Assembly: GCF_947568905.1 (NCBI RefSeq)
Contig: NC_079173.1
Coordinates: 33,852,001-33,916,000, forward strand
Source of the DNA: Ostrea edulis
Taxonomy: Eukaryota
Length of the DNA stretch: 64,000 bases
Direction of reading: 5' to 3'
Of this stretch, positions 26,501 through 50,660 are shown one piece after another. Position 1 is the stretch's first letter. Each line of letters opens with the position of its first letter. The position numbers and the translations under genes are program-made. The notes under the pieces are model-generated. The model saw nothing but the letters and a program-made list of their open reading frames with translations. It had not been told where the DNA came from and searched no databases.

Positions 26501-26922
26501 ATTTGGCACTACTATCAATCTATTAAATTAACATACTAGTGTTGAATACATTTATTTATTTCATATCTGAATTCATGCATCAATCACAATGACTATCACA
26601 TCCTTTACAATCAACAAGCAAAATCACTATACGCTGCTGAAAATATCATTATGATGATTGTTGAAATTATTAAAATTGTGACCTTTAGTGACCTGACTAA
26701 TGAGTAAAATACCTGTTATCTGTATTCATAACAAAAGATAATCATTGTACAAAAAATACTGTATAAAATCTTAATTAAAAAGAACAATCAATTTGTGACT
26801 GATTTTACATTTGAAAAACGGATCACAATTACTGAAATCACAATATTTCAGGTTAACTTCTACATACAAGAGAGCAAATGCAAACTGCAGATTTATTCTG
26901 AGAGTTCTAGCATTCCCAAGAT

Positions 26923-27018
26923 TCATTCACAACGGTCAGGATGTGCCCACTGGTCAAGTGACTTCCCAATCTTTTTCTTTACAGCCTCTGTGGCATCTGT
27001 CAACTCGTGGACAACCTT
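26923..27018 (-). CDS. AKR exon 8 (KVVHELTDAT…WAHPDRCE*)
   Basis: Acceptor actttgcag|AAG, phase 0; TGA at 26925-26923; AATAAA on the minus strand about 26 nt downstream. Confidence 0.85.
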   Translation of the reverse strand, partial: KVVHELTDATEAVKKKIGKSLDQWAHPDRCE

Positions 27019-27084
27019 CTGCAAAGTGTTCAGTAAAACAGATAGTCAAAACAGGTTCATTATAATGACATTAATATCACAACA

Positions 27085-28165
27085 TGTCTATCTGTAATTC
27101 TGACCTTGTTCATCAACATGTCTGTAAGTCTATCTGTAACTCTGACCTTGTTCATCAACATGTCTGTAAGTCTATCTGTAACTGTAACCTTGTTCATCAA
27201 CGTGTCTGTAAGTCTATCTGTAACTCTGACCTTCTTCATAACATATCTGTAAGTCTATCTGTAACTCTGACCTTGTTATCAACATGTCTGTAAGTCTATC
27301 TGTAACTGTAACCTTGTTCATCAACATGTCTGTAAGTCTATCTGTAACTGTAACCTTGTTCATCAACATGTCTGTAAGTCTATCTGTAACTGTGACCTTG
27401 TTCATCAACATGTCTGTAAGTCTATCTGTAACTGTGACCTTGTTCATCAACATGTCTGTAAGTCTATCTGTAACTGTGACCTTGTTCATCAACATGTCTG
27501 TAAGTCTATCTGTAACTGTGACCTTGTTCATCAACATGTCTGTAAGTCTATCTGTAACTGTGACCTTGTTCATCAACATGTCTGTAAGTCTATCTGTAAC
27601 TGTGACCTTGTTCATCAACATATCTGTAAGTCTATCTGTAACTGTGACCTTGTTCATCAACATGTCTGTAAGTCTATCTGTAACTGTGACCTTGTTCATC
27701 AACATGTCTGTAAGTCTATCTGTAACTGTGACCTTGTTCATCAACATGTCTGTAAGTCTATCTGTAACTGTGACCTTGTTCATCAACATATCTGTAAGTC
27801 TATCTGTAACTGTAACCTTGTTCATCAACATGTCTGTAAGTCTATCTGTAACTGTAACCTTGTTCATCAACATGTCTGTAAGTCTATCTGTAACTGATCT
27901 TGTTCATCAACATGTCTGTAAGTCTATCTGTAACTCTGACCTTGTTCATCAACATGTCTGTAAGTCTATCTGTAACTCTGACCTTGTTCATCAACATGTC
28001 TGTAAGTCTATCTGTAACTGTGACCTTGTTCATCAACATATCTGTAAGTCTATCTGTAACTCTGACCTTGTTCATCAATATGTCTGTAAGTCTATCTGTA
28101 ACTGTGACCTTGTTCATCAACATATCTGTAAGTCTATCTGTATCTTTAACCATGTTCATCAATAA
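27085..28165. repeat. 42-bp minisatellite, about 25 units, in AKR intron 7
   Basis: Unit tctgtaactgtgaccttgttcatcaacatgtctgtaagtcta, highly homogeneous in the centre. Confidence 0.95.
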
Positions 28166-28199
28166 ACGAAATGTGTTTGTGAAACACAAATGCCACCGA

Positions 28200-28411
28200 T
28201 AATGGCCAATTCCAAAGATGGCCAATGTCACATGGACAAATTAATATCTTGGTACCAGTAGAAAGATCTTCTCACAAGAAATGCTCAGGTGCAATATGAA
28301 AGCTCTAATATTTACCATTTAGAAGTTATGACCAATGTTAAATCTTTTTAAAAGTAGGTTAGACTCCAAGGTCAAAGGGTAAAAAATGATGGTACCCACG
28401 GAAAGGTCTTG

Positions 28412-28452
<41 letters not shown>

Positions 28453-28455
28453 TAC
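28200..28455. mobile_element. Interspersed repeat remnant with two diverged monomers about 141 bp apart (Helentron-type internal repeat)
   Basis: gaaagatcttctcacaagaaatgctcaggtgcaatatgaaagctcta versus gaaaggtcttgtcacaaggaatactcatgtgaaatatcaaagctcta. Confidence 0.45.
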
Positions 28456-28555
28456 TGCTCATACTATTTCATGTATAATTTGTTGTTGTATATACTTTAT
28501 ACCAGGTCCTATGAACTGAATGGTTCTTGGTCAATAAACAATAAAATACAATACA

Positions 28556-29050
28556 ATACCTGAGGAAGGTGTATAATTAGCCTGAGTTTACCCGAGAAAG
28601 GTGTATAATTAGCCTGAGTTTACCCGAGGAAGGTGTATAATTAGCCTGAGTTTACCTGAGGGAGGTCTATAATTGAGTCCGAGTTTACCTGAGAGAGGTC
28701 TATAATTATCCCGAGTTTACCCGAGGGAGGTCTATAATTAGCCTGAGTTTACCTGAGGAAGGTGTATAATTAGCCTGAGGAAGGTATATAATTAGCCCGA
28801 ATTTACCTAAGGGAGGTCTATAATTGAGTCCGAGTTTACCTGAGGGAGGTCTATAACTAGTCAGAGTTTACCTGAGGAAGGTATATAATTAGCCCGAGTT
28901 TACCTGAGAGAGGTCTATAATTATCCCGAGTTTACCTGAGGGAGGTCTATAATTAGCCTGAGTTTACCTGAGGAAGGTGTATAATTAGCCTGAGTTTACC
29001 TGAGGAAGGTGTATAATTAGCCTGAGTTTACCTGAGGAAGGTCTATAATT
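28556..29050 (-). repeat. 32-bp minisatellite made of the AKR exon 7 / intron 7 junction (about 15 donor copies)
   Basis: Minus-strand unit AATTATA(C/G)ACCTTCCTCAG|GTAAACTCAGGCT equals the last 19 exon nt plus the first 13 intron nt. Confidence 0.93.
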
Positions 29051-29193
29051 TCACAGTTCTCCACCATTTGCTCCGGTGTTCTAGCGCCCACTATGGCCAC
29101 TGGTACATTAGGCTGGTTCACCAACCACGACAACGCTGCCTTCGCCATGGGAACATTGGCCTTTTTGCATATATCACTCATCTTGGTAATTGC
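29032..29193 (-). CDS. AKR exon 7 (AITKMSDIC…SWLVNQPNVPVAIVGARTPEQMVENCEIIDLPQ)
   Basis: Acceptor acaattccag|GCA, donor CCTCAG|gtaaac; AKR-type AL.W…IVGART.EQ motif. Confidence 0.92.
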
Positions 29194-29305
29194 CTGGAAT
29201 TGTTTGTAAATCTCAATGTATTTCTAGATCATTATGAACATGGAACTTTCCTTACAGACACCTGCTTCCATTGAAACAATTATTCCAAATGCACTGTTAT
29301 ATATA

Positions 29306-29480
29306 CAGTTGAACTTAGGTATTTTGAACATCGATATCTCAAATACCATGAATATTTTGTAGTGAGTTGGAAGTACCAACTACATTTTCTGTTTACATTT
29401 TATCCTCAATATCGTGAACCCTTACATATCTCGAAGTTTTTTCTCAGCCCCATTGAGTTTGAGATAACGAGGCTCGACTG
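29306..29480. mobile_element. Tc1/mariner-type MITE
   Basis: TA|CAGTTGAACT … GGCTCGACTG|TA; imperfect TIRs with a TA duplication. Confidence 0.65.
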
Positions 29481-29585
29481 TATCTTTAAACTAGCTGTCC
29501 AGATTTAGTGTTACAGTTGCTGTGTAAAGGTTTAATCACTTGTTGCACAATGTGAAATGCTTGAAATTTTACATCTGTATCGAGT

Positions 29586-29849
29586 CCCGTGGGGATCCGG
29601 GTTAGAGTAGGTCCTCAGTACCCCTTGCTTGCTATAAGAGATGACTAAATGGGGCAGTCCTTCGGGTGAGACCGCAAAAACTGAGGTCCTGTGTCACAGC
29701 AGGTGTGGCACGATAAAGATCTCTCCCTGCTCAATGGCCATATGTGCCAAGCATAGGCCTAAATTTTGTAGCTCTTCATCGGCAGTGGTGACATTCTCCA
29801 TATGAATGAAATATTCTTGAGAGGGACATCAAACAATATTCAATCAATC
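29586..29849 (+). mobile_element. SINE (same family as 14252-14483)
   Basis: Aligns to the reverse complement of 14252-14483; (CAAT)n tail. Confidence 0.75.
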
Positions 29850-29929
29850 TGTATCGAGTGCTAATTCAAAGTGAACAGGCCAATTCCAATCAAGCCAAAT
29901 CTGACTATAAACAGGTAAAGGCCTGTATA

Positions 29930-30312
29930 TATAAGTCGGATTATACAGGTATCGCTGTATATGTTGCAATATAAAGGTTTCAATATATATGTCAGATTAC
30001 CAAGTTTCATCGTACATGTCAAATTAGCAAGGTTTCATTGTATATGTCAGATTAGACAGGTTTGACTGTACATGTTGGATTAGACAGGTGTCACTGTCGA
30101 CTATACATGTTTCACTATATATGTCGGATTATACAGGTTTCACTGTGTATGTCGAATTATAAAGGTTTCACTGTATATGTCAGATTATACAAATTTCATT
30201 ATATATGTTATATTATACAGGTTTCACTATATATGTCGGATTATACAGATTTCACTGTATATGTTGGATTATACAGGTTTTACTGTATGTTGGATTATAC
30301 AGGTTTCACTGT
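29930..30312. repeat. Degenerate tandem array (about 31 bp, about 12 units) of a mariner-like right terminus
   Basis: Repeating gtcggattatacaggtttcactgtata; the reverse complement starts TACAGTGAAACC, a TA|CAGT terminus. Confidence 0.6.
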
Positions 30313-30887
30313 ACTTTGGGCTATTTCTGAAGCCTCTTTGACTAAGAAATCAAAAGGTATTTCTTCTCTCCCATCTATAATCTCCATGGAAAGAGAAGAT
30401 GAACAATCGAATGGTACTCTCTTTATTCAGATCACAGATACAGGATAATATTGTTTCATCTGGTTGATTGAATACTGTGACCTTGACTCAGAAATCTATA
30501 AGGACCTCTTTTCCCCACCAAATTGCAATGCATGTACCGAGAATGAGGTAGCAAGATCAAATGATATCTCTTTCCATTGTATTGTTGATATATGATCTAT
30601 TGACCTGGGGATCAATATGCGAGTATGTTGAGGTAGCTAGGTTATAAAAAATTTTGCGAGGATAAAATCTGCGAAACAGTGATGTCATAGTTGAAATAAA
30701 TATAGGTATATCACTAAGTATATATCTTTAATTCTGATTTTATTTTCATGCAAGATTTATTCAAACATAAAATAAACCATGCAGCTACTAACATCGAAAG
30801 AAATATAAAATGTTATACTGATGTTGTGTAATTTGTGTCTGATCAGTATGATAGTAAACTGATGGCGTCATAACTATACATCAATTG

Positions 30888-31185
30888 TATCTCGCTTAAC
30901 GTCTCTCTTGAGAATCTTTTACTCATATGGAGACGTCACCAAGACCGGCGAAGGGCTTCAAATTTAGGCCTTTGCTCGGTGCTTATGGCCATTGAACAGT
31001 AATTGTTCTTTAGCGTAACACACCTACTGTAACACGAGACATCCGTTGTTAAGATCATCTCCGAGGACCTGTGACATTCACACCTGATGCTGAGCATCTG
31101 GTGATGGAACTGCCACTACCTGTTTTAACGACTTAAAGTCTGTCGCGGCAGGGATTCGAACCCCGTACTTCTGCATGCGGGGAAC
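30888..31185 (-). mobile_element. tRNA-derived SINE, near full length
   Basis: B-box-like gggattcgaacccc at about 31151; 3' half shares gagacgtcacca … tttaggcct.tgctcgg with the other SINE copies. Confidence 0.75.
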
Positions 31186-31958
31186 TATACATCGAGTGAT
31201 ATTGACACATGTAAAGATTTTGTTAACTGTGACATGTAAATATCAACAAAATATGGAGGATTTGAAATATATGCAATGGAGTATACATGTATAATGTGAA
31301 ACACTGAGAATTTATTGATATTATATAGGTATGTTTTCATTCTGTTCAACAGAAAAAGATTCTGTACTTCATCTGATGTTCCTGTCACATACTGAAATAA
31401 AACTGCAAAAGTATAACACTGTGCTACATACTTTTAGAGCCTTTTTATACACCGTGTGAAAGATAAAAAAAAAATAACAAACATGACAATTGCTGCTAGA
31501 ATCATCTGATAAGAAAAATTTCAAAGAAAACTAATTTCGTGTTTAAATATTCAATAATCATTTCTTACTGAAAGCGGTAGGATTCTAGCAGCACTTTTGA
31601 TATACTATGGGTGTTTTACCGTCATCATTGCCAGTTAGATCAATGTTTAAATCCTGGGGTAGTATGTTACTTTTCCATTTTCTATTAATGTACATTCGTG
31701 ATCTATTTATAACAGTCATACAATGACGTCATACAAAAGCACATATTTGTCATGTTGTTATGATACAAAATGTTCTCATGTGAACAACCACAATAGTTTT
31801 ATAGTGTTAATAGCTCCTTCCCTCTGTGTAGGACATTATTTAAAGACTGTATAATTTACGTGCATAAATGGAGTATGACCTGCCTTAACATACCCCGCAT
31901 TAAAGGCAGCTTTTCCCTCTTACCTCTGTTACAATCATGGGACTAAAACATGAAATGA

Positions 31959-32152
31959 TACTCTATAGGGGGGCCTGCAGTACTTATGAATGGTCCCGTT
32001 ACTCTATAGGGGGGCCTGCGGTACTTATTAATGGTCCCGTTACTCTATAGGGGGGCCTGCAGTACTTATTAATGGTCCCGTTACTCTATAGGGGGGCCTG
32101 AAGTACTTATTAATGGTCCCGTTACTCTATAGGGGGGCCTGCGGTACTTATG
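31959..32152. repeat. 41-bp tandem repeat, 5 units
   Basis: Unit actctataggggggcctgc(a/g)gtacttat(t/g)aatggtcccgtt. Confidence 0.9.
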
Positions 32153-32283
32153 AATTTCTATACTCCCTGTCACAATGAATTATGAGAGGATATCAACAGT
32201 ATCTGAAAATTTGATGATTATATACAATATTTTTTTTTGGATTTACATGCATGTACATTTTATTTTAAATGGCCTATGAATAC

Positions 32284-32335
32284 CTCAAACACTTCTTTTT
32301 CTGCACCCTCTTGCCCATGCCTTGCTAAATGACAG
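32284..32335 (-). CDS. AKR exon 6 (52 nt; (S)CHLARHGQEGAEKEVFE)
   Basis: Acceptor tttttcttgtttcag|C, donor TTTGAG|gtattc; bridges phase 2 to phase 0 exactly. Confidence 0.85.
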
Positions 32336-32543
32336 CTGAAACAAGAAAAATATACCATTGTTGCTCAGATATTTAATAATTTTGGTGTTGCATAAAATAA
32401 CTTTAATTAACACTGTGCTTAATTTTAACACACACACACACAGAAAGAGAGAGATAGAGAGAGAGAGAGAGCGATACTATATAAAGTATTATGCCACAAA
32501 ACAGAAGAAATAGGCCAGTATTAAGGTCACCAACTAAATCTAC

Positions 32544-32722
32544 CTCTCTGGAGAGAAGAGTTTCCCACGTCTTCTGCCCATAGGTATATCATCCACCTTC
32601 AGGAACCTCCCTGACAGAAGACCCTGCTGTAGCGGTGAGTAGGCAAGGATGCTGACTCCATACTTCTCACACACAGGTATAACTTCATGTTCCACCGACC
32701 GCCACAGTAAATTATAGCCAAT
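32544..32722 (-). CDS. AKR exon 5 (IGYNLLWRSVE…ILAYSPLQQGLLSGRF…FSPE)
   Basis: Acceptor ctgattgtag|ATT, donor GAGAG|gtagat (phase 2); AKR YNLL.R..E and AYSPL..GLL.G motifs. Confidence 0.92.
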
Positions 32723-34090
32723 CTACAATCAGTCAGGGGCATAAATACGTCAATATAATACTGACACAGACCGCCACAGTAAATTATAGCCAATCTACAA
32801 TCAGTCAGGGGCATAAATACGTCAATATAATACTGACACAGACCGCCACAGTAAATTATAGCCAATCTACAATCAGTCAGGGACATAAATACGTCAATAT
32901 AATACTGACACAGACCGCCACAGTAAATTATAGCCAATCTACAATCAGTCAGGGGCATAAATACGTCAATATAATACTGACACAGACCTCCACAGTAAAT
33001 TATAGCCAATCTACAATCAGTCAGGGGCATAAATACGTCAATATAATACTGACACAGACCGCCACAGTAAATTATAGCCAATCTACAATCAGTCAGGGGC
33101 ATAAATACGTCAATATAATACTGACACAGACCGCCACAGTAAATTATAGCCAATCTACAATCAGTCTGGGACATAAATACGTCAATATAATACTGACACA
33201 GACCGCCACAGTAAATTATAGCCAATCTACAATCAGTCAGGGGCATAAATACGTCAATATAATACTGACACAGACCGCCACAGTAAATTATAGCCAATCT
33301 ACAATCAGTCAGGGGCATAAATACGTCAATATAATACTGACACAGACCGCCACAGTAAATTATAGCCAATCTACAATCAGTCAGGGGCATAAATACGTCA
33401 ATATAATACTGACACAGACCGCCACAGTAAATTATAGCCAATCTACAATCAGTCTGGGACATAAATACGTCAATATAATACTGACACAGACCGCCACAGT
33501 AAATTATAGCCAATCTACAATCAGTCAGGGGCATAAATACGTCAATATAATACTGACACAGACCGCCACAGTAAATTATAGCCAATCTACAATCAGTCAG
33601 GGGCATAAATACGTCAATATAATACTGACACAGACCGCCACAGTAAATTATAGCCAATCTACAATCAGTCAGGGGCATAAATACAATATAATACTGACAC
33701 AGACCGCCACAGTAAATTATAGCCAATCTACAATCAGTCAGGGGCATAAATACGTCAATATAATACTGACACAGACCGCCACAGTAAATTATAGCCAATC
33801 TATAATCAGTCAGGGGCATAAATACAATATAATACTGACACAGACCGCCACAGTAAATTATAGCCAATCTATAATCAGTCAGGGACATAAATACGTCAAT
33901 ATAATACTGACACAGACCTCCACAGTAAATTATAGCCAATCTATAATCAGTCAGGGACATAAATACGTCAATATAATACTGACACAGACCGCCACAGTAA
34001 ATTATAGCCAATCTATAATCAGTCTGGGACATAAATACAATATAATACTGACACAAACCTCCACAGTAAATTATAGCCAATCTACAATCT
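32696..34090 (-). repeat. 72-bp (some 69-bp) minisatellite made of the AKR intron 4 / exon 5 junction (20 acceptor copies)
   Basis: Minus-strand unit TGTGTCAGTATTATATTGACGTATTTATGCCCCTGACTGATTGTAG|ATTGGCTATAATTTACTGTGGCGGTC; repeat starts counted at 32701, 32773 … 33991, 34060. Confidence 0.95.
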
Positions 34091-34661
34091 ACAGGGGCAT
34101 AAGAGAATAATCATAACAATACACAAAGTGGGGCATCCCCTCAGCAATTAGTCAGAGACAAAGGAAAAAGATCATAATCCAACATAATATGTACAAACAA
34201 GAGCTTCTCAAAATGGAGAATCCCCTCGACAATCAGTCAGGTGCATAAAAGCATAATCATAATATAATCCGTAAAGCGGGGAATCCCCTCAGCAATCAGT
34301 AAATGTAAGTTTATTTTAATATGAAGTTCCACCTTGACCTTTCACTTTATAATCAATAGGGTTCCAACTAACAAAGCTAAATGTGAAATATCAAATCAAC
34401 TGAGCAAAAATATGGCCTGAGTGTCTACAACCTAAATGTTACACACAATTTGTACTGTTTTTCAATTGGGGGAGGGGCTAATTTTCAACAACAAAAATTT
34501 GTCCGACTCCGGTATTACACTTCTTGTTTACATTTCCGGTATAGGAACGTGAAAAGTCACATGAAGAAAATAGATTTATATGGTTTTCTTAATTTCTCGC
34601 GTTCTTACAGACGTAAATCTTGAAGAAGTTAGGTACATGTATATTTCTGTTATATCCTTAA

Positions 34662-35178
34662 AGGGACTGATTCACGATTTTACCCAAAATTTAGTTTTTC
34701 ACTTTTAATGATCAAAATCTACTGTCTAATGTGTTTGAAAGATTTCACATGAAAATTAAGGTTATACATCATCACAGAAGCTCAGTTTAGAGAGTTTATT
34801 ATTTGTTTTGTAAATAAAGATTGCAGTATGCTATTGTTTACAAAATTTTCAAAAGAAATGGATATCGATCTAAGTATTATTATATCTTTCACATTTCAAG
34901 CATTTTTGGGGTGAAATGTGTCATCTAAAAGTTAAAATTTGTTACTATGCAAAATTAAGATGCATTATATTGCAAAATTAATATTTCACTTGTTTGTTTG
35001 TTTACATAAAAAGACTCGAGTCTTTGTTTACATAACACATATTTAAGGCTAAAATATTACTTTTATTCTTGCATTCAGAAGGTCAAAATTTTGGCTCTCA
35101 ACATTAAATGAGCTATATTTCTAATGTTTAACATCAAAAATGAAAAATATTTTTATCAAAAATCGTGAACCAGTCCCT
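34662..35178. mobile_element. Kolobok-like MITE, copy 1
   Basis: TTAA|AGGGACTGATTCACGATTTT … AAAATCGTGAACCAGTCCCT|TTAA. Confidence 0.8.
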
Positions 35179-35288
35179 TTAAGTTAAAGCTTAACCTGGA
35201 ATTAGTGTATGAAAATAGCAAAGATTGATATCCATCTGCCATTAAATGATGTGGATCTGTTGGGAAAAAAAACCTCGTTTGTCTTTAA

Positions 35289-35801
35289 AGGGACTGGTTC
35301 ACGATTTTTGAAAAAAATATTTTTCATATTTGATGTCAAACATTAAAAAATATAACTGATTAAATGATGACAGCCAAAATTTTGAACTTCTGAACGCAAG
35401 AAAAAAAGCAATATTTTAGCCTTAAATCTGTGTTATGTAAACAAAGACTCGAGTCTTTTCATGTATACAAACAAACCAGTGAAATGTTAATTTTGTAATA
35501 TAAAGCATTCTAATTTTGCAAAGTTGCAAATTTTAACTTTTAGATGACACATTTTACCCGAAAAATGCTTGAAATGTGAAAGATATAATAAACTTAGATC
35601 GATATCCATTTCTTTTGAAAATTTCGTAAACATAACATACCGCAATCTTTGTTTACAAAACAATTAGACTCTCTAAAATGAGCTTCTGTAATGATGTATA
35701 ACCTTGATTTTTATGTGAAGTCTTTTAAATACATTAGACAATAGATTTTGATCATTAAAAGTGAAAAACAAAATTTTGGGCGAAATCGTGAATCAGTTCC
35801 T
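35289..35801. mobile_element. Kolobok-like MITE, copy 2, inverted relative to copy 1
   Basis: Same TIR and TTAA flanks; the interior is the diverged reverse complement of 34662-35178. Confidence 0.8.
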
Positions 35802-36531
35802 TTAATATTTTTCTCAGAAAATAAAAATTAAAATCCTCCCATCCACTCCATACTTTTTGCTGACCCTGGATGATAATCTACTAATTAAGTTGAATTGGCC
35901 TAAGGATGATTTTTTTAAGGGGGGGGGGCTCATTTTCATAATTTGCTTAGTACTAGGGACATCCATACAAATTTTCATAATTTTCTTTGGAGTTAATTTA
36001 GAACACACAAAGAAATTAGAATTTTCTGTGAACAAAAGATTACAGTTCTGAAGACATCTACCAAAGATGGATAACTCATCCAGCACAAAATCAAGATCTC
36101 GTGAACAATGCTTTTTTTCAAATCCCTCAACTTCATTCAACTAAAATAAGTGATTTTACAGAACATTGTTAAAGTATTTGTCAAAATTGTGTAAAATTTG
36201 AACTTTTCTTTTTCATGACAAGGTGCACAAAAGATATTATCATTGATGTTTTGATAAATAAAAACTTCAAAATATCATTTAATCTGTCTTCAAGCATCTA
36301 TAAAAACTATATTCTATATTTTTGGAAACTTGCCATTAATGGATATAAAATTTGCAAATATTGCATGAATTACATGTAGATGAAAAGCAACAGCATTAGA
36401 TTTGAGTTTGTTGATTATTTTTGAAAATGATAACAATCATCAAAATACAATATAGTATAGTAACTGATTGATCAGCTCAGGGTTGGAAATTGAGCTAGAT
36501 GAAAGTCAGCCATTTCGATTTAAGCAGATAT

Positions 36532-36641
36532 TCCCTGTAATCTCAAACAGAATGAGAGAATTTTACCTGGTTTGAGACAGGTTTAACTCCCTGTAACCTC
36601 AAACAGAATGAGAGAATTTTACCTGGTTTGAGACAGGTTTA
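36532..36641 (-). repeat. 56-bp tandem duplication spanning the AKR exon 4 donor
   Basis: AAACCTGTCTCAAACCAG|GTAAAATTCTCTCATTCTGTTTGAG occurs twice, giving exon ends at 36623 and 36567. Confidence 0.9.
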
Positions 36642-36781
36642 CCGCCGGCATCCACAAAGTTCTTCATGTTGACTGGTCCAAAGTTCGAGACTCCATAGTA
36701 TTTGATCCGTCCCAGAGAAACCTGTCGATTCAGCTCCTTCACGGAGTCTTCCATATTGTCCAAAAAGATGGGAAAGTGTAC
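36623..36781 (-). CDS. AKR exon 4 (VHFPIF…GRIKYYGVSNFG…KPVSNQ)
   Basis: Acceptor tatttacag|GTA, donor AACCAG|gtaaaa; catalytic His and the G.I…GVSNF signature. Confidence 0.92.
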
Positions 36782-38422
36782 CTGTAAATAATCAGGCTAT
36801 TCCATTTGAATCTACCCACGGGGGTGGAGAGAGGATGTCACTGACGGTGGTGGGGGAGATTGTAAAATATTGAAAGGGAGGGAAGGGACAGATTAAATTT
36901 TTTATGGGGGTGGGGGTGTTTCAGCCAATGAATATGAGTTTATACAATGTTTGCAATGAACTTTGTCCTTTTACAGGTGACTTGATTTACTATTATACAT
37001 GCCCCAAACAGCTTCAGAACTAAAGTTCTTTTAGAGGGGAGGGGGGTGGAGACATATCACAAATCTCTGTTCCAATGGCATTCATTTTTGTAGTTACTGC
37101 CCTTACACCAGAAGTAGGGTGCAGTGCTTACCGATAGGGTCCAAAGATTCTGATGAAATAGTAGTAACAAATAGGATATTATAAAGCGTACGGTGCCAAA
37201 ATCTTTATTATGGGCTGAGTTTTTACAGGTTAATGTTTCATTTCTCTTATATAATAACAAAGTTTATTCGATTTTACGAAGAACACTTTTTAGAATATAC
37301 ACTTCGTTAAATTGAATTGATGGAAAGTGAGGAGTACTATAGACCTATACCCAGTAGGCCTATCTGGTGCTTAATTCTGTCCAAGTAATGGTACTATTAA
37401 TACCAACACTTTATGAGTAATCGGCCGTTAAAAACTAATACTAAATAACAGACATATGGAAACAAAAGTAGGATGAAAACATAATTATCAATATACTTAT
37501 AAATTAACTATTTTTGCCAATACGCTCTGAAACGCTTAGTCCAGTGTTACTGTTTGCACCTTTGTTCATATGTGAGGTGAAGTCCATCGTAAGCTAGAAT
37601 AGAATCTCACTTGATTAATAAATATCATAAAATGAATTAAAAAACCACTTTCATTTTTGATAAACTGCCCTGAAATAGCAAAAATGAAAGTAAAGTGGCG
37701 GATCTAAGCCAGTTTTCTTCCTTTTTTTAATGACAACTTAAGATAATAAGATATGAAGTTAATCCGTTGTTTATCGATGCTTGATTTTGATCTTACAGAA
37801 GAAATAAGATTTGATAATTGTTGAATGAATAAAATATGCCTGTTCGTTTCTTCAATCCATGATTTTAGTCTTGAATCAGCCTTACGGAAATTTCCAGAAC
37901 AAAGTGAGGCAACGTCGTACCAATCGCACATGCTTGGGCCTTTCCGGCAAGCCTAGGCCCATATTTATTTTATGAAGATTTATAATCATTTATAATCTTA
38001 GACCAAGCCTGCTACATTTGATGTCATAATTAGCCCCTTTTGAAAAATCTAAATACTGTACAAGTATGAGATACAATTTATATGATTGTAAGCTTATCCA
38101 CAATACAATGCTTCAATGTTGTTTTTGATCATTTTTGCATACACTTGTATACAATGTATTGAGAGGTTTTCAGTAAGATAAAAATACTAGGCATGAAAAG
38201 AACGCAAATTACATCAAGACAAAATCAGATCTCGGATCCACTCCCGAGTTTGTTATGTTGCTAAGCTTCCTTCACAAGCTACACATACTGTAACTATACA
38301 CCAGATTCCAGGGAATGGAATCAAAGATATTATTTCAATCAAATTGTCCAAAATGGAAACAGAATTCACTTCCATACTCTATCTTTTGCAACACATTATA
38401 ATGCATGTATCTCAAAGTTCAC

Positions 38423-38608
38423 CTGCAACAGGTCGACGTACGAAGTCTTGAGCTTATTGAGACTCGTAGTGACAGCTTCATCGATCTGCTGGGCCGTGTA
38501 GGGTGGGGTGATGGGCCCCTCACGGAATCCAAACTTAGTGGCAATAACTGCGTCCTGTCTCCTGCCCTCCAGGGCAGCCCCCAAAACCTCCTCAGACCCT
38601 GCATAACC
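38423..38608 (-). CDS. AKR exon 3 (GYAGSEEVLG…IATKFG…SLNKLKTSYVDLLQ)
   Basis: Acceptor ttttatactcag|GGT, donor TTGCAG|gtgaac; catalytic Tyr and Lys; SL..L.T.Y.DL motif. Confidence 0.93.
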
Positions 38609-38854
38609 CTGAGTATAAAAATAACATCTTACATGCCAAATTCTGGATGTTCAACAAAATTTGCCATTGTCTTTTAAAATTTAAGATTCCATATTCAAGA
38701 AATTTTATGCACAATTCATAGAAATATCTATCATCAAAAATTAACAATTTTCAGTATACTTTTCAGAATTGCAAAATACTATAAAAGTTGCCTCCCTTTT
38801 CAAAAAAATGTTTCTGTTTTCCCTCAAAATCCTTTGTAACTTATGAAATAATAA

Positions 38855-41320
38855 ATATTAACACAATCTACCTTATCAGGGAAATAATTAATATTAACAC
38901 AATCTACTTTATCAAGGAAATAATTAATATTAACACAATCTACCTTATCAGGGAAATAACTAATATTAACACAATCTACCTTATCAGGGAAATAATTAAT
39001 ATTAACACAATTTAACCTACCTTATCAGGGAAATAATTAATATTAGCACAATCTAACTTATCAGGGAAATAATTCATATTAACACAATCTAACTTATCAG
39101 GGAAATAATTAATATTAACACAATCTAACTTATCAGGGAAATAATTCATATTAACACAATCTACCTTATCAGGGAAATAATTAATATTAACACAAATATC
39201 TACCTTATCAGGGAAATAATTAATATTAACACAATCTACTTTATCAAGGAAATAATTAATATTAACACAATCTACCTTATCAGGGAAATAACTAATATTA
39301 ACACAATCTACCTTATCAGGGAAATAATTAATATTAACACAATTTAACCTACCTTATCAGGGAAATAATTAATATTAGCACAATCTAACTTATCAGGGAA
39401 ATAATTCATATTAACACAATCTAACTTATCAGGGAAATAATTAATATTAACACAATCTACCTTATCAGGGAAATAATTAATATTAACACAAATATCTACC
39501 TTATCAGGGAAATAATTAATAACACAATCTACCTTATCAGGGAAATAATTCATATTAACACAATCTACCTTATCAGGGAAATAATTCATATTAACAGAAA
39601 TATCTACCTTATCAGGAAAATAATTAACATGAACACAATCTACCCTATCAGGGAAATAATTAATATTAACACAATCTACCTTATCAGGGAAATAATTAAT
39701 ATTAACACAATCTAACTTATCAGGGAAATAATTAATATTAACAAAAATATCTACCTTATCAGGGAAATAATTAATATTAACACAATCTACCTTATCAGGG
39801 AAATAATTAATATTAACACAATCTACCTTATCAGGGAAATAATTCATATTAACACAAATATCTACCTTATCAGGAAAATAATTAACATTAACAGAATCTA
39901 CCTTATCAGGGAAATAATTAATATTAACACAATCATCCTTATCAGGGAAATAATTAATATTAACACAATCTAACTTATCAGGGAAATAATTAATATCAAC
40001 AAAAATATCTACCTTATCAGGGAAATAATTAATATTAACACAATCTACCTTATCAGGGAAATAATTCATATTAACACAATCTACCTTATCAGGGAAATAA
40101 TTCATATTAACACAATCTACCTTATCAGGGAAATAATTAATATTAACACAATCTACCTTATCAGGGAAATAATTCATATTAACACAAATATCTACCTCAT
40201 TAGGAAAATAATTAACATTAACAGAATCTACCTTATCAGGGAAATAATTAATATTAACACAATCTAACTTATCAGGGAAATAATTAATATCAACAAAAAT
40301 ATCTACCTTATCAGGGAAATAATTAATATTAACACAATCTACCTTATCAGGGAAATAATTAATATTAACACAATCTACCTTATCAGGGAAATAATTAATA
40401 TTAACACAATCTACCTTATCAGGGAAATAATTAATATTAACACAAATATCTTCCTTATCAGGGAAATAATTCATATTAACACAAATATCTACCTTATTAG
40501 GAAAATAATTAACATTAACAGAATCTACCTTATCAGGGAAATAATTAATATCAACACAATCTACCTTATCAGGGAAATAATTAATATTAACACAATCTAA
40601 CTTATCAGGGAAATAATTCATATTAACACAAATATCTACCATATCAGGGAAATAATTAATATTAACACAATATACCTTATCAAGGAAATAATTAATATTA
40701 ACACAATCTACCTTATCAGGGAAATAATTCATATTAACACAAATATCTTCCTTATCAGGGAAATAATTAACATTAACACAATCTACCTTATCAGGGAAAT
40801 AATTCATATTAACACAATCTACCTTATCAGGGAAATAATTAATATTAACACAATCTACCTTATCAGGGAAATAATTCATATTAACACAATCTACCTTATC
40901 AGGGAAATAATTCATATTAACACAATCTACCATATCAGGGAAATAATTAATATTAACACAATATACCTTATCAAGGAAATAATTAATATTAACACAATCT
41001 ACCTTATCAGGGAAATAATTCATATTAACACAAATATCTTCCTTATCAGGGAAATAATTAACATTAACACAATCTACCTTATCAGGAAAATAATTCATAT
41101 TAACACAATCTACCTTATCAGGGAAATAATTAATATTAACACAATCTACCTTATCAGGGAAATAATTCATATTAACACAATCTACCTTATCAGGGAAATA
41201 ATTCATATTAATACAAATATCTACCTTAGGGAAATAATTAATATTAACACAATCTACCTTATCAGGGAAATAATTAATATTAACACAATCTAATTTATCA
41301 GGGAAATAATTAATACAATC
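38855..41320. repeat. 36-bp minisatellite (33/39-bp variants), about 67 units, in AKR intron 2
   Basis: Unit acacaatctaccttatcagggaaataattaatatta; higher-order block duplications are visible (a rare variant caatttaacc recurs at about 39010 and 39342). Confidence 0.95.
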
Positions 41321-41750
41321 AACCTATATTTTTTCCCCCCAGATTTAATTGATAAAACTTCAGACTCCTGTGCTTTGGCTTGATCTTTAAACAGAATAAA
41401 AGTATGCCTACCATTTAATTATCCCGAACAGTCGGAAAAACTATGAGATAATGGGAAAACAGTGACATATAATGATGGACCTCAGCTTGACCAAGCAAAG
41501 GGAAATAACTTCTACGAATATACCACTCGACTATAGATGATTGTGCTGTAACTAAGTTTTACATCTTGCAATATGATACTACAGTTGCACACACAAACTT
41601 TCCCAATGGAAACCATAAATCAAGGAAGTTTGTCCACAAATATTCCACTATGGGAAGTTTGTCCACTTATTATGAGAAGTTTGTCCACTTATTCCACTAT
41701 GGTGTGATATACAAAAAAAAAGAAACAACAATTACAGAAAGATGTCTTAC

Positions 41751-41813
41751 CTCTGCGGTGTCGAAGAAATTAACACCAATCTCAAAACATTTGTCAACTA
41801 TTGCTTTAGATTC
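41751..41813 (-). CDS. AKR exon 2 (ESKAIVDKCFEIGVNFFDTAE)
   Basis: Acceptor ctatttttcag|GAA, donor GCAGAG|gtaaga; G.NFFDTA motif with the catalytic Asp. Confidence 0.93.
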
Positions 41814-42996
41814 CTGAAAAATAGAAAACATGCACCATGATAAAGAAGAGCATAGCCTGAGACGTACTGATGTAACATAGCAAACCAGAGGCCCACAGGC
41901 CTTACCAGTCACCCGAGTATTACTGATGTAACATAGTAAACCAGAGGCCCACAGGCCTTACCAGTCACCCGAGTATTACTGATGTAACATAGTAAACCAG
42001 AGGCCCATAGGCCTTATCAGTCACCTGAGTATTAGTTAAAAGTATCACTAGTCCCACAGGCCTTATCAGTCACCTGAGTATTAGTTAAAAGTATCACTAG
42101 TCCCACAGGCCTTATTAGTCACCTGAGTATTAGTTAAAAGTATCACTAGTCCCACAGGCCTTATCAGTCACCTGAGTATTAGTTAAAAGTATCACTAGTC
42201 CCACAGGCCTTATTAGTCACCTGAGTATTAGTTAAAAGTATCACTAGTCCACACGCCTTATCAGTCACCTGAGTATTAGTTAAAAGTATCACTAGTCCCA
42301 CAGGCCTTATCAGTCACCTGAGTATTAGTTAAAAGTATCACTAGTCCACAGGCCTTATCAGTCATCTGAGTATTAGTTAAAAGTATCACTAGTCCCACAG
42401 GCCTTATCAGTCACCTGAGTATTAGTTAAAAGTATCACTAGTCCACACGCCTTATCAGTCACCTGAGTATTAGTTAAAAGTATCACTAGTCCCACACGCC
42501 TTATTAGTCACCTGAGTATTAGTTAAAAGTATCACTAGTCCACACGCCTTATCAGTCACCTGAGTATTAAAAGTATCACTAGTCCACAGGCCTTATTAGT
42601 CACCTGAGTATTAGTTAAAAGTATCACTAGTCCACACGCCTTATCAGTCACCTGAGTATTAGTTAAAAGTATCACTAGTCCCACAGGCCTTATCAGTCAC
42701 CTGAGTATTAGTTAAAAGTATCACTAGTCCCACAGGCCTTATCAGTCACCTGAGTATTAATTAAAAGTATCACTAGTCCACAGGCCTTATCAGTCACCTG
42801 AGTATTAGTTAAAAGTATCACTAGTCCACACGCCTTATTAGTCACCTGAGTATTAAAAGTATCACTAGTCCACAGGCCTTATCAGTCACCTGAGTATTAG
42901 TAAAATACGTATCACTAGTCCCACAGGCCATATCAGTCACCTGAGTATTAGTTAAAAGTATCACTAGTCCCACAGGCCTTATCAGTCACCTGAGTA

Positions 42997-45900
42997 CAGG
43001 GCTCGAAATTAGCGAAAAATACTCGCAAAATGCAAGTACATTTGAAAAATAGCGAGTAAAAATAGTGGGCACTCGAAAATCTTAGCGAGTGGTGATTTAC
43101 AAACTATGATCGTATCGTATCCGTTTTATACGGTGATGCGCTATTCGCTTGTCTAAAACTTGCACTCTGAATCATACAAACGCACATGAACGACATATTT
43201 GAACAACCGTTTCTATCCGGATTTTTCTTTTATGATTTTTTAAAGAAAATCGGAGTCAAATAAATGCTTTACAGGTCGGACATCGTGCATCACATTATGA
43301 TGAAAAATATAGACATGTGCCACGAGTCCTGTTCACCTATAGGGGTCATTAAATTGAATTCCAAGTATGAGGTTTTTCTTTTTCGTTTATCTTTTTAAAA
43401 AAATCGGAGTCTATGTTTTACCAAGTCTTCCGGTAGTTATTTTTATCAGAATCATGAGAATGTCCTATCTAAATTAATTTATTCTCATATTGAGGTCGGG
43501 TTGTAGTGATGACATGGGTGCACTGCTCACTGCGTAGATGATTATCAAAAAAGTTCATGGGGCTCGTGACCACGAGTTCAGGATTCGCTTTGAAAAATCA
43601 CTAGTGACAACCTTGATGTGGCATGAAATTGCGGTAAATAGGTTGTGGATTAGAGGTGCGATAATCAAGAGACCTAAATATTGCACCATATGACTCGCGT
43701 AACTTAGTGTCTTGTCCAAATGATGCCTGTTGACCCACTAGGCTCAGTAATGATGGGGAAAATCATTGAATTAAAAAAAAACATGAAAAAAGAGCACTGC
43801 TTTATTATTTTAATTTAGCTTGTAGGTTTTAATTTTAGCCTGTCGATTTTTTACCCACAGGCTAAAATTAGCCTGTGGTAGAAAAAGTTACAGACCCTGA
43901 AACGTGCTACTACACCAGTTGCACGGTACGGTTCGGTACGCTTTATGAACGGTACGGTTCGTTTTCTGAACGGTACGGTTCGTTTCTTGAACGGTACGGT
44001 TCGTTTCTTGCACGGTACGGTACGCTTCTTGAACGGTACGGTTCGCTTCTTGCACGGTACGGTTTGCTAAAAATAGCTGCACGCTTTGTGAACGGTTTGC
44101 ACGTTTTATTAATGAGGTGGGAGTGGCCTGAACGCTTTGACTTCGTATACATTGTACGTTTCGATAGTTTGTTTTCACTCGATCGGTCTTATTCGGCTCT
44201 TTGATTATCGGTTGCAGGATTTGTGGTTGTGTTAGAATGTGCACATGGGGAAATGAGACGTTATTTTTTATTGCTTCGATGGAATAATTCCATATTGATA
44301 ACGTACATAAAAGTTATGAATAAAAGTTTTTAGAATTTGCTTAAGTCTAAGTCTTAATGGTTGTTATTACGTTTCAATTTGTTTTTCATTTCTCATCAGA
44401 CATTTATTAATTTACGATTTTATAAAAAGTTGTTACATGAACTGCTCCCCGACATGGGCGTGCGTAAGTGTAAAAACAAAGCGTATTAAGTTTCCGGATA
44501 TAAATTACAGTGCCTAAATTGGAAAAGTTTTTAAGAAGAAGTGAATTTTGTTTTGAATACACTAAAGTCGCAAATGACACAATGATTATTTTCTGCACTT
44601 CACATTTATCACATTCATCGGCATTATGAAAGATCCAGGATATCTGCACGTGAAGTTTGTACGTCCTTTTTTGTCAGCATTCAGTCATTCATAATTAATA
44701 ATGTTAGATATCTGTTGCATTTGTCTTTGAATCAAATAAAATGATGATAATACATATATATTCCTATCCTTTATCACGCGAAGTCCGATTTTCATTTCCC
44801 TGACTTTATTTTTGATCACTGAAAATTGAATTTAAAAAAATTAACAGAAAAGTAAGGCAAGTGTATAGTTTGCAATAAAAATGTTTCATATACCTTTTCT
44901 ATATATTGTTGAAATACTTGAAAATGCTGAAATGAATAATTTTTTGCGGCCGATTTGATGCTTTGCATCAATTTAACTTGTTTACATTCTTTTACACATG
45001 TATGTATCTATTTATTTCTCTGTCGATGTAATTAAAAATTGTTTATTAGTGTATATAATAAATCCGCCAATCTACATCTATCTATATGGGTCCGTTATCA
45101 ATGTAGAAGAGAAAAAGATATGTCAAAATTATTGCTAATAAAGTAATGAAAATATTACAGTGTAGAACGTGACAATTTTTCTAATCGGTTTAGAAATTTC
45201 TCATATGATTCAGACACTGTACGTAGGAAAGTACATATTGAATACATTAACGCTACAAATATCAATTTCATCTTCTTACGGCAAGCCCTGTGCCATACGT
45301 GTAGTAGCATTATCAGGGACGTCGACGTCCCTGATTATATGAAGAAATTAAATATGCTACTTGTAAGTACTATTACAGTATTGTAGTTAACTTCACCCTT
45401 GAATTTAAAAGAATTGATTGAAACAGAAATTCCGTTAAAACAACGAAATGCCCCTTGGTTCACTCTTTAAAAGTCTGCAAGTGAAATATACATCCACAGT
45501 ACACAGGACTGGCTGCAGAAGCATGCATGCAAAATCCGTGCAGTGATCTGACGTCTATTTCTGTTAACAGTTCACAGTATAAAACGAATTTTTATGCATA
45601 ATTCAGTCAAAACTTGGGTACTTGTTGATAACATACATACACATATATGCACTGAAACAATGTGACATTTACGGAAAGTAATTTAAAAAAAAAAGAATAT
45701 CAAAGATGTTTTAAGCATCTCGGTGATTTTCACAGTTGATAACCCAGATGTTTGAGGATAATGCTTCGAATAGCCAGCGATAGTCTACAACCTCCTTTCC
45801 CATCGGGCGCCATTGTGAAAATAATATACTGTGGCTGAAAAAGTGGGTCACGTGACATAAATTGCACGCTTTCTGCACGGTACGGTACGCTTTCGGGCTT

Positions 45901-46135
45901 TTGGGGGCGGGGTTTGCATAATATTATCCTGCACGCTTTCTGAACGGTACGGTTCGTTTCTTGAACGGTACGGTTCGTTTCTTGCACGGTACGGTACGCT
46001 TCTTGAACGGTACGGTTCGTTTTTTGCACGGTACGGTACGTTTTTTGAACGGTACGGTTCGTTTCTTGCACGGAACGGTTCGGTTCGTTTTTAAGGCGTA
46101 GTAGCACGTTTCAGGGTCTGTAATTTCGACCCCTG
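42997..46135. mobile_element. Non-autonomous DNA transposon with CAGGG termini and probable 5-bp TSD (hAT5-like), about 0.9 kb without its nested insert
   Basis: CAGGGCTCGAAATTA … TAATTTCGACCCCTG; flanks GAGTA / GAATA (1 mismatch). Confidence 0.72.
43891..46120. mobile_element. 2.2-kb non-autonomous Tc1/mariner-like element with 21-bp subterminal tandem repeats
   Basis: TA|CAGACCCTGAAACGTGCTACTAC … GTAGTAGCACGTTTCAGGGTCTG|TA; arrays of cggtacggttcgtttcttg(a/c)a inside both ends. No transposase ORF seen. Confidence 0.8.
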
Positions 46136-46934
46136 GAATATTAGTTAAAAGTGTCACTATAGTCCCACAGGCCTTATCAGTCACCTGATTATTAGTTAAA
46201 AGTATCACTTTAGACCCACAGGCCTTATCAGTCACCTGATTATTAAAAGTATCACTAGTCCAAAGGCCTTATCTGTCACCTGAGTACTAGTTACATGTAA
46301 TAGTATTACCAGCCCCACAAGCCTTATTGGTCACCTGAGTATTAAAAGTATCACATGTCCCTGGGTCAAGCCTTATCAGTTAACTGAGTATTAAAAATAT
46401 TACTAGTCCCACAGAGTATATTCTTTTCTGCTTTTTCTAAATATGCATTTAGTTTTTATACTGCATCAGCAAACTTAAAGATTTTTGAAAATTTGTCAAC
46501 TTTTGACAGTTTTTGCCCCACTCCTAAGGGTCTAGGTGTGCAGGAGAACTGAAATTTACAATTTATGTCCGCCTTATCTTAAAGATGCTTCATACCAAAT
46601 TTGAAAAGAATTGGATGTTAGTTATATAATCATATAAGTGAAAATTACAGTGAAGAGCTAGTTTTGTTCAGAAAGACAAGACAGAATGCATAGCTTTAAT
46701 TTAAAAAAAATCACTTAAGTCCCTCAAGTAAATCAAATAAAAGGAAGAACGGAGGGCATAGCTTTAAACAATTTTCCAAATTATAAAGGAACCCGTCCTT
46801 GTACAAAACAGTGCTGGTCCACGAACCGGACTCAATCCTTAGGCCAGCTATGGCTAATTTCAAAGACTGTACATGTATTTACCCGATAAATGACAGTAAT
46901 AATATCCAGCTGCACCTTAACTGAAGTTAAACAT

Positions 46935-47140
46935 CCCTATAAGTGTGGACCATTAGAAGCACTCATTCAGTACCAGACCTATAAGTGTGGACCATTAGAA
47001 ACACTCTTTCAGTACCTGACCTATAAGTGTGAACCATTAGAAGCACTCATTCAGTAAGTGTGGACCATTAGAAACAGCCATTCAGTACCTGACCTATAAG
47101 TGTGAACCATTAGAAGCACTCATTCAGTACCAGACCTGAG
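46935..47140. repeat. About 42-bp tandem repeat, about 5 units
   Basis: Unit cctataagtgtggaccattagaagcactcattcagtaccaga. Confidence 0.85.
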
Positions 47141-47304
47141 CTGAACCCTTTCTGACCTCCATATATGTACAATTGGGTGTAAACCCCTCATACCTGTACA
47201 GGTACATACACTTTACAGAGGTGGTAAATTTCAGTAACTGTCTCTAAACACATGCAGAAATAAAAGTAGATTAGACAGGTTTAGATTTTAAATGTAAATA
47301 TGTC

Positions 47305-50565: not shown

Positions 50566-50660
50566 CTTGGTGAACCTCATTGTTCATGATTCAGTTGTAT
50601 GTTCACTTTGCGACCTATATACTTTTTTATAAAACAAGTACTTGCTGAAATAACACCTAC

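What the first reader, a model, noticed from the sequence alone, without database searches (positions are those of the whole stretch)
28556..29050. AKR exon 7 donor array: every 32-bp unit reads as a complete recursive splice site
The minus-strand unit is …GGCTAATTATACACCTTCCTCAG|GTAAAC. It has a CTAAT branchpoint consensus with its A about 18 nt before the AG, a pyrimidine run, CAG, and immediately a GT donor. This is the YAG|GT ratchet-point architecture of recursive splicing. Splicing from the real donor to any distal unit regenerates the same exon end plus a fresh donor, so the intron could be removed stepwise with no trace in mRNA. Alternatively, direct use of donor 2 gives …DLPQVNSG* with the stop 17 nt before the last junction (probably NMD-insensitive), an AKR lacking its last 31 aa.
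Basis: partly seen in the sequence, partly recalled or inferred. Interest (0 to 1): 0.8.

Follow-up and report, generated by a model that had tools for sequence, protein, structure and literature searches.

The report
Splice-donor minisatellite in oyster AKR gene
A 32-base tandem repeat has copied the end of an oyster reductase gene's exon 7, with its splice donor, about 15 times into the next intron; this is a known, usually harmless kind of repeat, and stepwise "recursive" splicing through it is possible on paper but has no evidence here.

Summary
The array is real: 16 units of about 32 bp at 28557-29050. Unit 1 is the last 19 nt of exon 7 of an 8-exon aldo-keto reductase gene plus the first 13 nt of intron 7.

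"Every unit is a complete recursive site" is overstated. Of the 15 downstream units:
- 11 read YAG|GT, and 7 of those also have a branch-like motif.
- 3 read CGG, and one has lost its GT.

AG|GT is automatic, since all 7 exons of this gene end in AG.

The only junction-spanning transcript contig, from a close relative, shows the plain one-step join 29032 to 27018 from donor 1. No RNA contig lies on the array. Only contigs were served, so lariats, intermediates and rare isoforms could not be tested.

This is the known class of boundary-spanning ("mirage") minisatellites: human F7 IVS7, IFI6, CBS and amphioxus Adh3. In those the first donor is used and the copies stay silent or nearly so.

The scan has already noted the same kind on other pieces of this oyster genome. 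This gene alone has three such arrays.

One new point: two other deeply diverged bivalve lineages also carry extra copies of this exon end plus donor at the start of the same intron.

Verdict: a tolerated by-product of a repeat-prone genome. Recursive splicing is neither supported nor excluded.

The parts
28557..29050 (-). 32-bp minisatellite of 16 units. Unit 1 spans the exon 7/intron 7 border and units 2-16 are intronic copies of exon end plus donor.
   Evidence: TRF. Unit table.
29032..29193 (-). AKR exon 7 (54 codons, phase 0 at both ends). Its last 19 nt, 29050-29032, belong to unit 1.
   Evidence: Pfam PF00248, E = 2e-08. Splice sites read. 338-aa open model.
27019..29031 (-). Intron 7 (2,013 nt), GT..AG.
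   Evidence: Joint 27018<->29032, skips 2013, in a transcript contig of run X5.
26923..27018 (-). Exon 8 coding part (31 codons plus TGA stop).
   Evidence: Homologous exon in L001 and L007.
26542..26922 (-). 3' UTR, ending at a poly(A) site after 26542.
   Evidence: RNA contigs of X1 and X3 cover 26542-26971 and 26542-26921 with 0 mismatches and a T20 loose end.
27086..28162 (-). Unrelated 42-bp x 25.7 minisatellite in the same intron.
   Evidence: TRF.
28163..28470 (.). Very high-copy dispersed repeat inside intron 7.
   Evidence: Summed contig depth of 1e5-1e6 in X7, with many partial contigs and joints.
36532..36641 (-). 56-bp x 2 duplication spanning the exon 4 donor (exon ends CAG at 36623). 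The second copy has an intact CAG|GTAAAA.
   Evidence: TRF. Sequence.
32693..34102 (-). 72-bp x 19.7 array that copies the exon 5 acceptor and the first bases of exon 5 (exon starts at 32722).
Evidence: TRF. Sequence.
26542..50780 (-). Whole AKR gene. Coding exons: 50780-50661, 41813-41751, 38608-38423, 36781-36623, 32722-32544, 32335-32284, 29193-29032 and 27018-26923.

Best explanation
This is a boundary-spanning ('mirage', F7-IVS7-type) minisatellite. A tandem duplication that straddled the exon 7/intron 7 border of an aldo-keto reductase gene was amplified by slippage or unequal exchange to 16 units. The result is 14 more GT donors in the first 472 nt of the intron (one more unit reads GC).

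The gene is still made correctly because the spliceosome uses the first donor, which sits in its native exon context. The copies act as silent or nearly silent pseudo-donors and leave with the intron in one step.

Shown here:
- the array and its register;
- the intact 338-aa gene model;
- expression of the gene in the window's species;
- the canonical donor-1 junction in a close relative;
- similar border duplications in other lineages and at two other borders of the same gene.

Inferred:
- the copies are silent in this species;
- the array has no function of its own.
For: - Array structure and register.
- Higher-order periods of 151 and 215 bp and shared variant blocks (units 4-5 resemble 11-12). 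These are typical of minisatellite turnover.
- A transcript contig joins 29032 to 27018 with 56 nt on the exon 7 side, well past the 19 repeated nt, so donor 1 is unambiguous. No RNA contig lies on the array.
- The gene model is open across all 8 exons, and 3'-tag RNA contigs match the window at 100%.
- The same gene has two more border arrays, at the exon 4 donor and the exon 5 acceptor.
- Roughly ten minisatellites crowd its introns.
- The motifs decay: 3 units read CGG, 1 has lost GT, and branch-like motifs are missing in 4.
- Relatives have 1-3 extra copies of this exon end at the same place, and some have decayed.
- Known precedents show first-donor use: F7, LMNB2 and PDGFA use only the authentic donor, and IFI6 and CBS add the next two (PMC1557585). 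Amphioxus mirages do not disturb splicing (PMC3087553).
Against: - The junction contig comes from a relative (organism A, about 96% identical in the 3' UTR) whose own array status is unknown.
- The window species' RNA contigs stop at 26971 and do not reach the junction.
- Contigs drop rare isoforms and cannot show lariats, so silence of the copies is not demonstrated.
- Copies of this exon end persist or recur in three deeply diverged lineages (third-codon identity about 50%). That is more than one might expect for a purely neutral accident, and it leaves room for a mutational hot spot or a weak benefit.
Confidence: 0.75

Rival explanations
1. Recursive (ratchet) splicing. Exon 7 is spliced in register to the YAG of a distal unit. 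This regenerates the same exon end plus a fresh GT, so the array is removed in several steps and leaves no trace in mRNA.

A weaker form is re-splicing. If a downstream donor is used first, donor 1 can later splice to the unit's YAG, now joined to exon 8, and restore the normal mRNA. That would make the array self-erasing and therefore tolerated.
For: - 11 of 15 downstream units read YAG|GT.
- 7 of these also have yTnAy 17-21 nt upstream.
- Pyrimidine content in -23..-4 is 11-13 of 20, equal to the gene's real acceptors at 10-14 of 20.
- Unit donors are as strong as real donors of this gene, with 7 of 9 consensus matches.
- The array RNA is unstructured, so it is accessible (z = +4.2).
- Recursive splicing at AG|GT exon ends and in shorter introns has been reported in human (PMC10156609).
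- Both donor-side border arrays of this gene sit on CAG-ending exons: 2 of the 3 CAG exons and 0 of the 4 GAG exons. This is not significant (p about 0.14).
Against: - There is no intermediate, lariat or array-containing RNA contig.
- The step to unit 2 is a 32-nt intron, with the donor about 15 nt from the branch. That is implausible from general knowledge of minimal introns.
- The AG is lost in 3 units and the branch motif is absent in 4, and copies in relatives decay. There is no constraint on the acceptor half.
- AG|GT and the pyrimidine run are by-products of the donor consensus and of the DLPQ codons.
- The intron is only 2 kb.
Confidence: 0.12
2. Alternative donor use as a product. Donor 2 or later is used in a meaningful share of transcripts. 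This gives an AKR ending ...DLPQVNSG without the last 31 residues, or sends the mRNA to decay, as a way to tune AKR output.
For: - In human IFI6 and CBS, the two pseudo-donors next to the authentic one are used constitutively (PMC1557585).
- Unit donors 2-7 are identical to donor 1 over -3..+8.
Against: - No contig with exon 7 plus a unit plus exon 8 was found in the RNA run that covers the junction.
- In F7, identical pseudo-donors are not used at all.
- The truncated protein would lose the C-terminal segment that is conserved in relatives (exon 8 homologues in L001 and L007).
- Every downstream donor gives the same premature stop, so copy number adds nothing.
Confidence: 0.08
3. The array is a U1 snRNP landing pad. 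Many intronic U1 sites next to the real donor would raise exon 7 definition or suppress premature cleavage in a repeat-laden gene.
For: Fourteen GT sites with 6-7 of 9 matches to the donor consensus lie within 472 nt and sit in unstructured RNA. This is inference only.
Against: Nothing tests this directly. The same genome makes such arrays at acceptors too (exon 5), where this logic does not apply. Copy number and unit length differ freely among relatives.
Confidence: 0.03
4. The array is an assembly artefact, inflated or collapsed.
For: Short-read contigs of the DNA-like run X7 break inside the array. One 451-nt contig leaves the window's arrangement after 29013.
Against: An independent 195-nt contig matches 28783-28977 with 4 differences, and other bins of the array are covered. 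Units carry ordered variants and a higher-order pattern. Relatives have homologous copies at the same place.
Confidence: 0.02

Closest known systems
Human F7 intron 7 37-bp VNTR (Borensztajn et al. 2006, PMC1557585)
   Same: The first monomer of the minisatellite spans the exon 7/intron 7 border, so the authentic donor is followed by identical pseudo-donors. Only the most upstream donor is used physiologically. Using a later one gives an aberrant transcript.
   Different: - F7 copies only 4 exonic nt, and its junction reads TGG|GT. There is no AG, so no acceptor-plus-donor look.
- F7 has 5-9 copies against 16 here.
- In F7, first-donor use was proven with 50 constructs. Here it rests on one contig from a relative.
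'Mirage' minisatellites of amphioxus (Adh3 and globin genes; PMC3087553, citing Canestro et al. 2002)
   Same: Both are tandem repeats of exon-intron borders, at donor or acceptor side, with several in one gene and units of 10-160 bp. Many but not all units keep AG/GT. Regular splicing is undisturbed. Concerted evolution occurs within arrays.
   Different: The phylum differs (mollusc here). The array is longer and lies in a genome where the scan's earlier notes report the kind at many genes. Somatic or allelic instability was not examined here.
Human IFI6 (6-16) 12-nt and CBS intron 13 31-bp border minisatellites (as summarised in PMC1557585)
   Same: The donor is reiterated 15-25 times by a border-spanning array.
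   Different: There the next two pseudo-donors are used constitutively. Here no such use was seen, though the data cannot exclude it. A 12-nt unit could never act recursively.
Recursive splice sites / ratchet points (Drosophila long introns; human sites incl. distal exon ends, PMC10156609, PMC6110457, PMC8605326)
   Same: Both have a juxtaposed acceptor and donor (YAG|GT) after a pyrimidine run. Splicing to the site would regenerate a 5' splice site.
   Different: - Known sites are single and conserved. They are mostly deep in long introns and are supported by lariats or sawtooth read patterns.
- These sites are tandem copies 32 nt apart, right beside the donor of a 2-kb intron.
- They are partly decayed and have no RNA evidence.

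Membership tests
Boundary-spanning ('mirage' / F7-type) minisatellite | Head-to-tail tandem array of 10-160-bp units | tested here: met
   32-bp period, 15.7 copies, score 648. 16 units listed.
Boundary-spanning ('mirage' / F7-type) minisatellite | The first unit spans a real exon-intron border, so the splice site is reiterated in the intron | tested here: met
   Unit 1 is 19 nt of exon 7 plus 13 nt of intron. The border is fixed by the reading frame, Pfam and the spliced contig.
Boundary-spanning ('mirage' / F7-type) minisatellite | The authentic (most upstream) site is used and the copies are silent or minor | tested here: inconclusive
   A donor-1 junction is seen in a close relative's transcript contig, and there are no array-containing RNA contigs. 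The window species' RNA contigs do not reach the junction, and contigs hide rare forms.
Boundary-spanning ('mirage' / F7-type) minisatellite | Copy-number instability or polymorphism | tested here: inconclusive
   Not measurable in this species from short contigs. In lineage B, L009 has 3 copies and L007 has 2 copies of the homologous about-100-nt unit.
Recursive splice site (ratchet point) | Pyrimidine tract, then YAG, immediately followed by a GT donor | tested here: inconclusive
   Met by 11 of 15 downstream units, and 7 of these also have a branch-like motif. Not met by units 9, 11, 14 and 15.
Recursive splice site (ratchet point) | Splicing intermediates: upstream exon joined to the site, lariats ending at the site, or sawtooth read density | not testable with these tools
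   Only Logan contigs were served for all runs, and the single read-laying run is used.
Recursive splice site (ratchet point) | The segment removed in each step is long enough to be an intron; typically long host introns | tested here: not met
   The host intron is 2,013 nt. Unit-to-unit steps are 32 nt, and the first feasible step is 64-96 nt.
Recursive splice site (ratchet point) | Evolutionary conservation of the AG|GT core | tested here: not met
   A-to-G changes destroy the AG in 3 units. Copies in L001, L008, L007 and L009 have lost AG or GT.
Aldo-keto reductase (Pfam PF00248) | Significant match to the family profile along the protein | tested here: met
   Four exons match consecutive parts of the profile (positions 53-276, E from 2e-08 to 4e-04, three of the four above Pfam's cut-off). 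The 338-aa model is open.

The most novel reading that the evidence does not exclude
Donor-side border minisatellites persist in this oyster genome preferentially where the exon end itself looks like an acceptor (pyrimidine run plus YAG). There, any in-register splice between a unit donor and a unit acceptor restores the exact exon end, whether it happens recursively before the main splice or as re-splicing after a wrong donor choice. Such arrays would be self-erasing and escape selection.

This would make recursive or re-splicing a genome-wide tolerance mechanism for splice-site minisatellites. It could also explain why this border has kept or regained donor copies in three deep lineages.
Probability: 0.12. 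Interest if true: 0.6.

Novelty: new member of a known kind. Interest (0 to 1): 0.28.

Why it matters
As it stands this is one more example of a described repeat class in a genome that is full of them, so it matters little by itself.

It does offer a natural experiment in 5' splice-site choice. Ten donors identical over -3..+8 (units 1-7, 10, 12, 13) lie 32 nt apart in an expressed housekeeping-type gene of an invertebrate. The F7 'oriented scanning' rule has not been tested in invertebrates.

If in-register recursive or re-splicing were shown, it would explain how a genome can litter its exon borders with functional-looking splice sites at no cost.

The cross-lineage recurrence at one border is a small new observation about how long such duplications last.

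Tried and rejected
- **Full-length protein searches.** The 338-aa spliced protein has no single reference, and I did not type it. So I could not do an exact look-up of annotated isoforms, including a ...VNSG-ending one, or fetch full-length orthologue loci. The exon-7 ORF search was the substitute.
- **Big representative search.** The protein is clearly an AKR.
- **Secondary-structure masking of the pseudo-donors.** Rejected. The array folds worse than shuffles (z = +4.2).
- **Array origin.** I considered whether the ancestral donor is at unit 16 (CAG|GTATTG). It resembles the intron start GTATT... of lineages A and B. I could not resolve this against a later deletion at the array's end.
- **Gene conversion into the exon.** The window's exon end codes IID, where relatives have IVD or VVD. 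Conversion from the array is plausible but untestable with one sequence per lineage.
- **Literature.** The search for recursive splicing plus minisatellite found no paper linking the two mechanistically. One search failed on a syntax error.

Full report
**What is there**

On the minus strand the window carries an 8-exon aldo-keto reductase gene.
- The coding exons are 50780-50661, 41813-41751, 38608-38423, 36781-36623, 32722-32544, 32335-32284, 29193-29032 and 27018-26923.
- Four exons hit Pfam PF00248 in consecutive profile positions.
- The spliced model is an open 338-aa frame.
- Exon 7 ends ...GAC CTT CCT CAG at 29032 and is followed by GTAAAC. The last exon starts at 27018 behind ...TTTGCAG.

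Tandem Repeats Finder reports a 32-bp period, 15.7 copies, 85% matches and score 648 at 28557-29050. This is far beyond chance. Cut in register, there are 16 units. Unit 1 is the last 19 nt of exon 7 plus the first 13 nt of the intron.

**How complete are the units?**

I scored each unit against the gene's seven real donors and seven real acceptors.
- Donors: CAG|GTAAAC matches 7 of 9 consensus positions, the same as the real exon 4 donor and average for this gene. Units 2-7, 10, 12 and 13 are identical to donor 1 over -3..+8.
- Unit 8 is TAG|GTAAAT, and unit 16 is CAG|GTATTG.
- Units 11, 14 and 15 read CGG|GTAAAC, so they have no acceptor AG.
- Unit 9 is a 22-bp unit reading CAG|GC.
- On the acceptor side, pyrimidines in -23..-4 are 11-13 of 20, against 10-14 in the real acceptors.
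- A yTnAy motif 17-21 nt upstream is present ahead of units 2, 3, 4, 6, 7, 10 and 16 among those with YAG|GT.

So 11 of 15 downstream units have the YAG|GT core and 7 have all three elements. 'Every unit' is overstated.

The look is also largely automatic:
- All seven exons of this gene end in AG before GT.
- The pyrimidine run is the Leu-Pro codons of a DLPQ that is conserved in all relatives.
- CTAAT is created at the joint between units.

**RNA evidence**

The run search returned four 3'-tag RNA runs labelled mollusc metagenome, two probable RNA runs of 'organism A' and DNA-like runs of 'organism B'. All are kept as contigs. Laid on 26500-29300:
- X1 and X3 give contigs 26542-26971 and 26542-26921 with no mismatch and a T20 loose end. 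The gene is therefore expressed in the window's species, with a poly(A) site after 26542. These contigs do not reach the junction.
- X5 gives a 127-nt contig with the joint 27018<->29032. It skips 2,013 nt, with ends CT..AC (GT..AG on the gene's strand). 56 nt lie on the exon 7 side, well past the 19 repeated nt, so donor 1 is used.
- X5 also gives an 812-nt contig that covers exon 7 and then leaves the genomic sequence.
- X5 differs from the window by 16 substitutions plus indels in the 3' UTR, so it is a close relative or a divergent haplotype.
- No RNA contig lies on the array.
- The DNA-like run X7 has a 195-nt contig on 28783-28977, which supports the array as real DNA.

Contigs cannot show lariats, intermediates or rare isoforms.

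**Feasibility of recursion**

From donor 1 to the YAG of unit n, the removed piece is 32(n-1) nt, and the donor-to-branch distance is about 15, 47 and 79 nt for n = 2, 3 and 4.
- From general knowledge of minimal introns, the step to unit 2 is not feasible, the step to unit 3 is borderline, and later steps are feasible.
- The array RNA is less structured than shuffles (z = +4.2), so the sites are accessible.
- Human lariat data show recursion at AG|GT exon ends and in small to medium introns (PMC10156609).

In-register splicing therefore cannot be dismissed on principle. Against a selected role:
- three units have lost the AG;
- four lack the branch-like motif;
- the host intron is only 2 kb;
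- the sites abut the donor.

**Relatives**

A word search with the exon-7 ORF found five clusters of genomic ORFs, 86-92% identical. Their contigs were fetched as L001-L010.

By exon-7 nucleotide identity there are three deep lineages:
- the window (W);
- A = L001-L006, L008 and L010, which are 92-95% identical among themselves;
- B = L007 and L009, which are 98.8% identical.

W is 78-80% identical to both, with third-codon identity about 50%. All three carry extra copies of the exon-7 end at the start of intron 7.
- In A, CTCAG|GTA recurs exactly 32 nt downstream of the real junction in L001-L006 and L010. This is the window's period.
- L010 adds three 24-nt units, each with CTCAG|GTAA.
- In L008 the +32 copy has decayed.
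- In B, an about-100-nt unit that includes 33 nt of exon 7 is present three times in L009 and twice in L007. The last copy has lost its GT.

So this border has carried a duplicated donor for a long time, or has regained one. Unit length and copy number turn over, and individual copies decay. This fits minisatellite dynamics, perhaps refreshed from the constrained exon. It shows no constraint on the acceptor half.

**Context**

The gene's introns hold roughly ten minisatellites. Two more span borders:
- a 56-bp x 2 duplication of the exon 4 donor, whose second copy has an intact CAG|GTAAAA;

Earlier notes of this scan report the same kind at several other genes of this genome, called an oyster there. 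I did not check them.

**Comparison with the known**

The class is described.
- Borensztajn et al. list human F7 IVS7 (37 bp x 5-9, first monomer spanning the border), IFI6, CBS, LMNB2 and PDGFA. They show that in F7 the pseudo-donors are functional but never compete with the most upstream one. In IFI6 and CBS the next two are also used (PMC1557585).
- In amphioxus such arrays were named 'mirages'. They occur on both sides of exons, keep AG/GT in many units, and do not disturb splicing (PMC3087553).
- No paper found links such arrays to recursive splicing.

**Verdict**

The thing is a new member of a known kind. Its most likely behaviour is first-donor, one-step splicing with silent copies (about 0.75).

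Appreciable recursive or re-splicing (about 0.12) and meaningful alternative-donor use (about 0.08) remain open, because only contigs were available.

The most novel reading still allowed is that acceptor-like exon ends make donor-side arrays self-erasing and therefore tolerated. A genome-wide count of YAG- versus RAG-ending exons among donor-side arrays, and raw nascent RNA reads, would test it.

Noticed in passing
window 36532-36641 (minus strand): A perfect-looking 56-bp x 2 duplication spans the exon 4 donor. A second intact CAG|GTAAAA lies 56 nt into intron 4.
   Followed up: partly
window 32693-34102: A 72-bp x 19.7 array copies the exon 5 acceptor and the first bases of exon 5. The homologous intron in L001 has no such array.
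   Followed up: partly
window 28163-28470: A stretch inside intron 7 is a very high-copy dispersed repeat. Summed contig depth is 1e5-1e6 in the DNA-like run, and it is also present in RNA-run contigs. The element type was not identified.
   Followed up: no
window 27086-28162: A 42-bp x 25.7 minisatellite ends 68 nt upstream of the exon 8 acceptor. Each unit holds two TTACAG acceptor-like motifs, but it is not a copy of the exon 8 border.
   Followed up: no
window 29032-29050 versus L001, L007-L010: The window's exon 7 ends in codons for I-I-D-L-P-Q, where both other lineages have I/V-V-D-L-P-Q. The window's exon end is identical or nearly so to its array units, so the array may have converted the coding sequence.
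   Followed up: partly
window 26542: Poly(A) addition site of the AKR mRNA, seen as T20 loose ends in two 3'-tag RNA runs. The 3' UTR is about 381 nt.
   Followed up: yes
window 18643-22083: A large G-rich 42/91-bp array of about 74 copies, with GC skew up to 0.77, lies in the neighbouring locus.
   Followed up: no
L009:313-556 versus L007:334-468: Two near-identical relatives (98.8% in exon 7) differ by one about-100-nt border unit, 3 copies against 2. This is copy-number change on a short time scale.
   Followed up: partly
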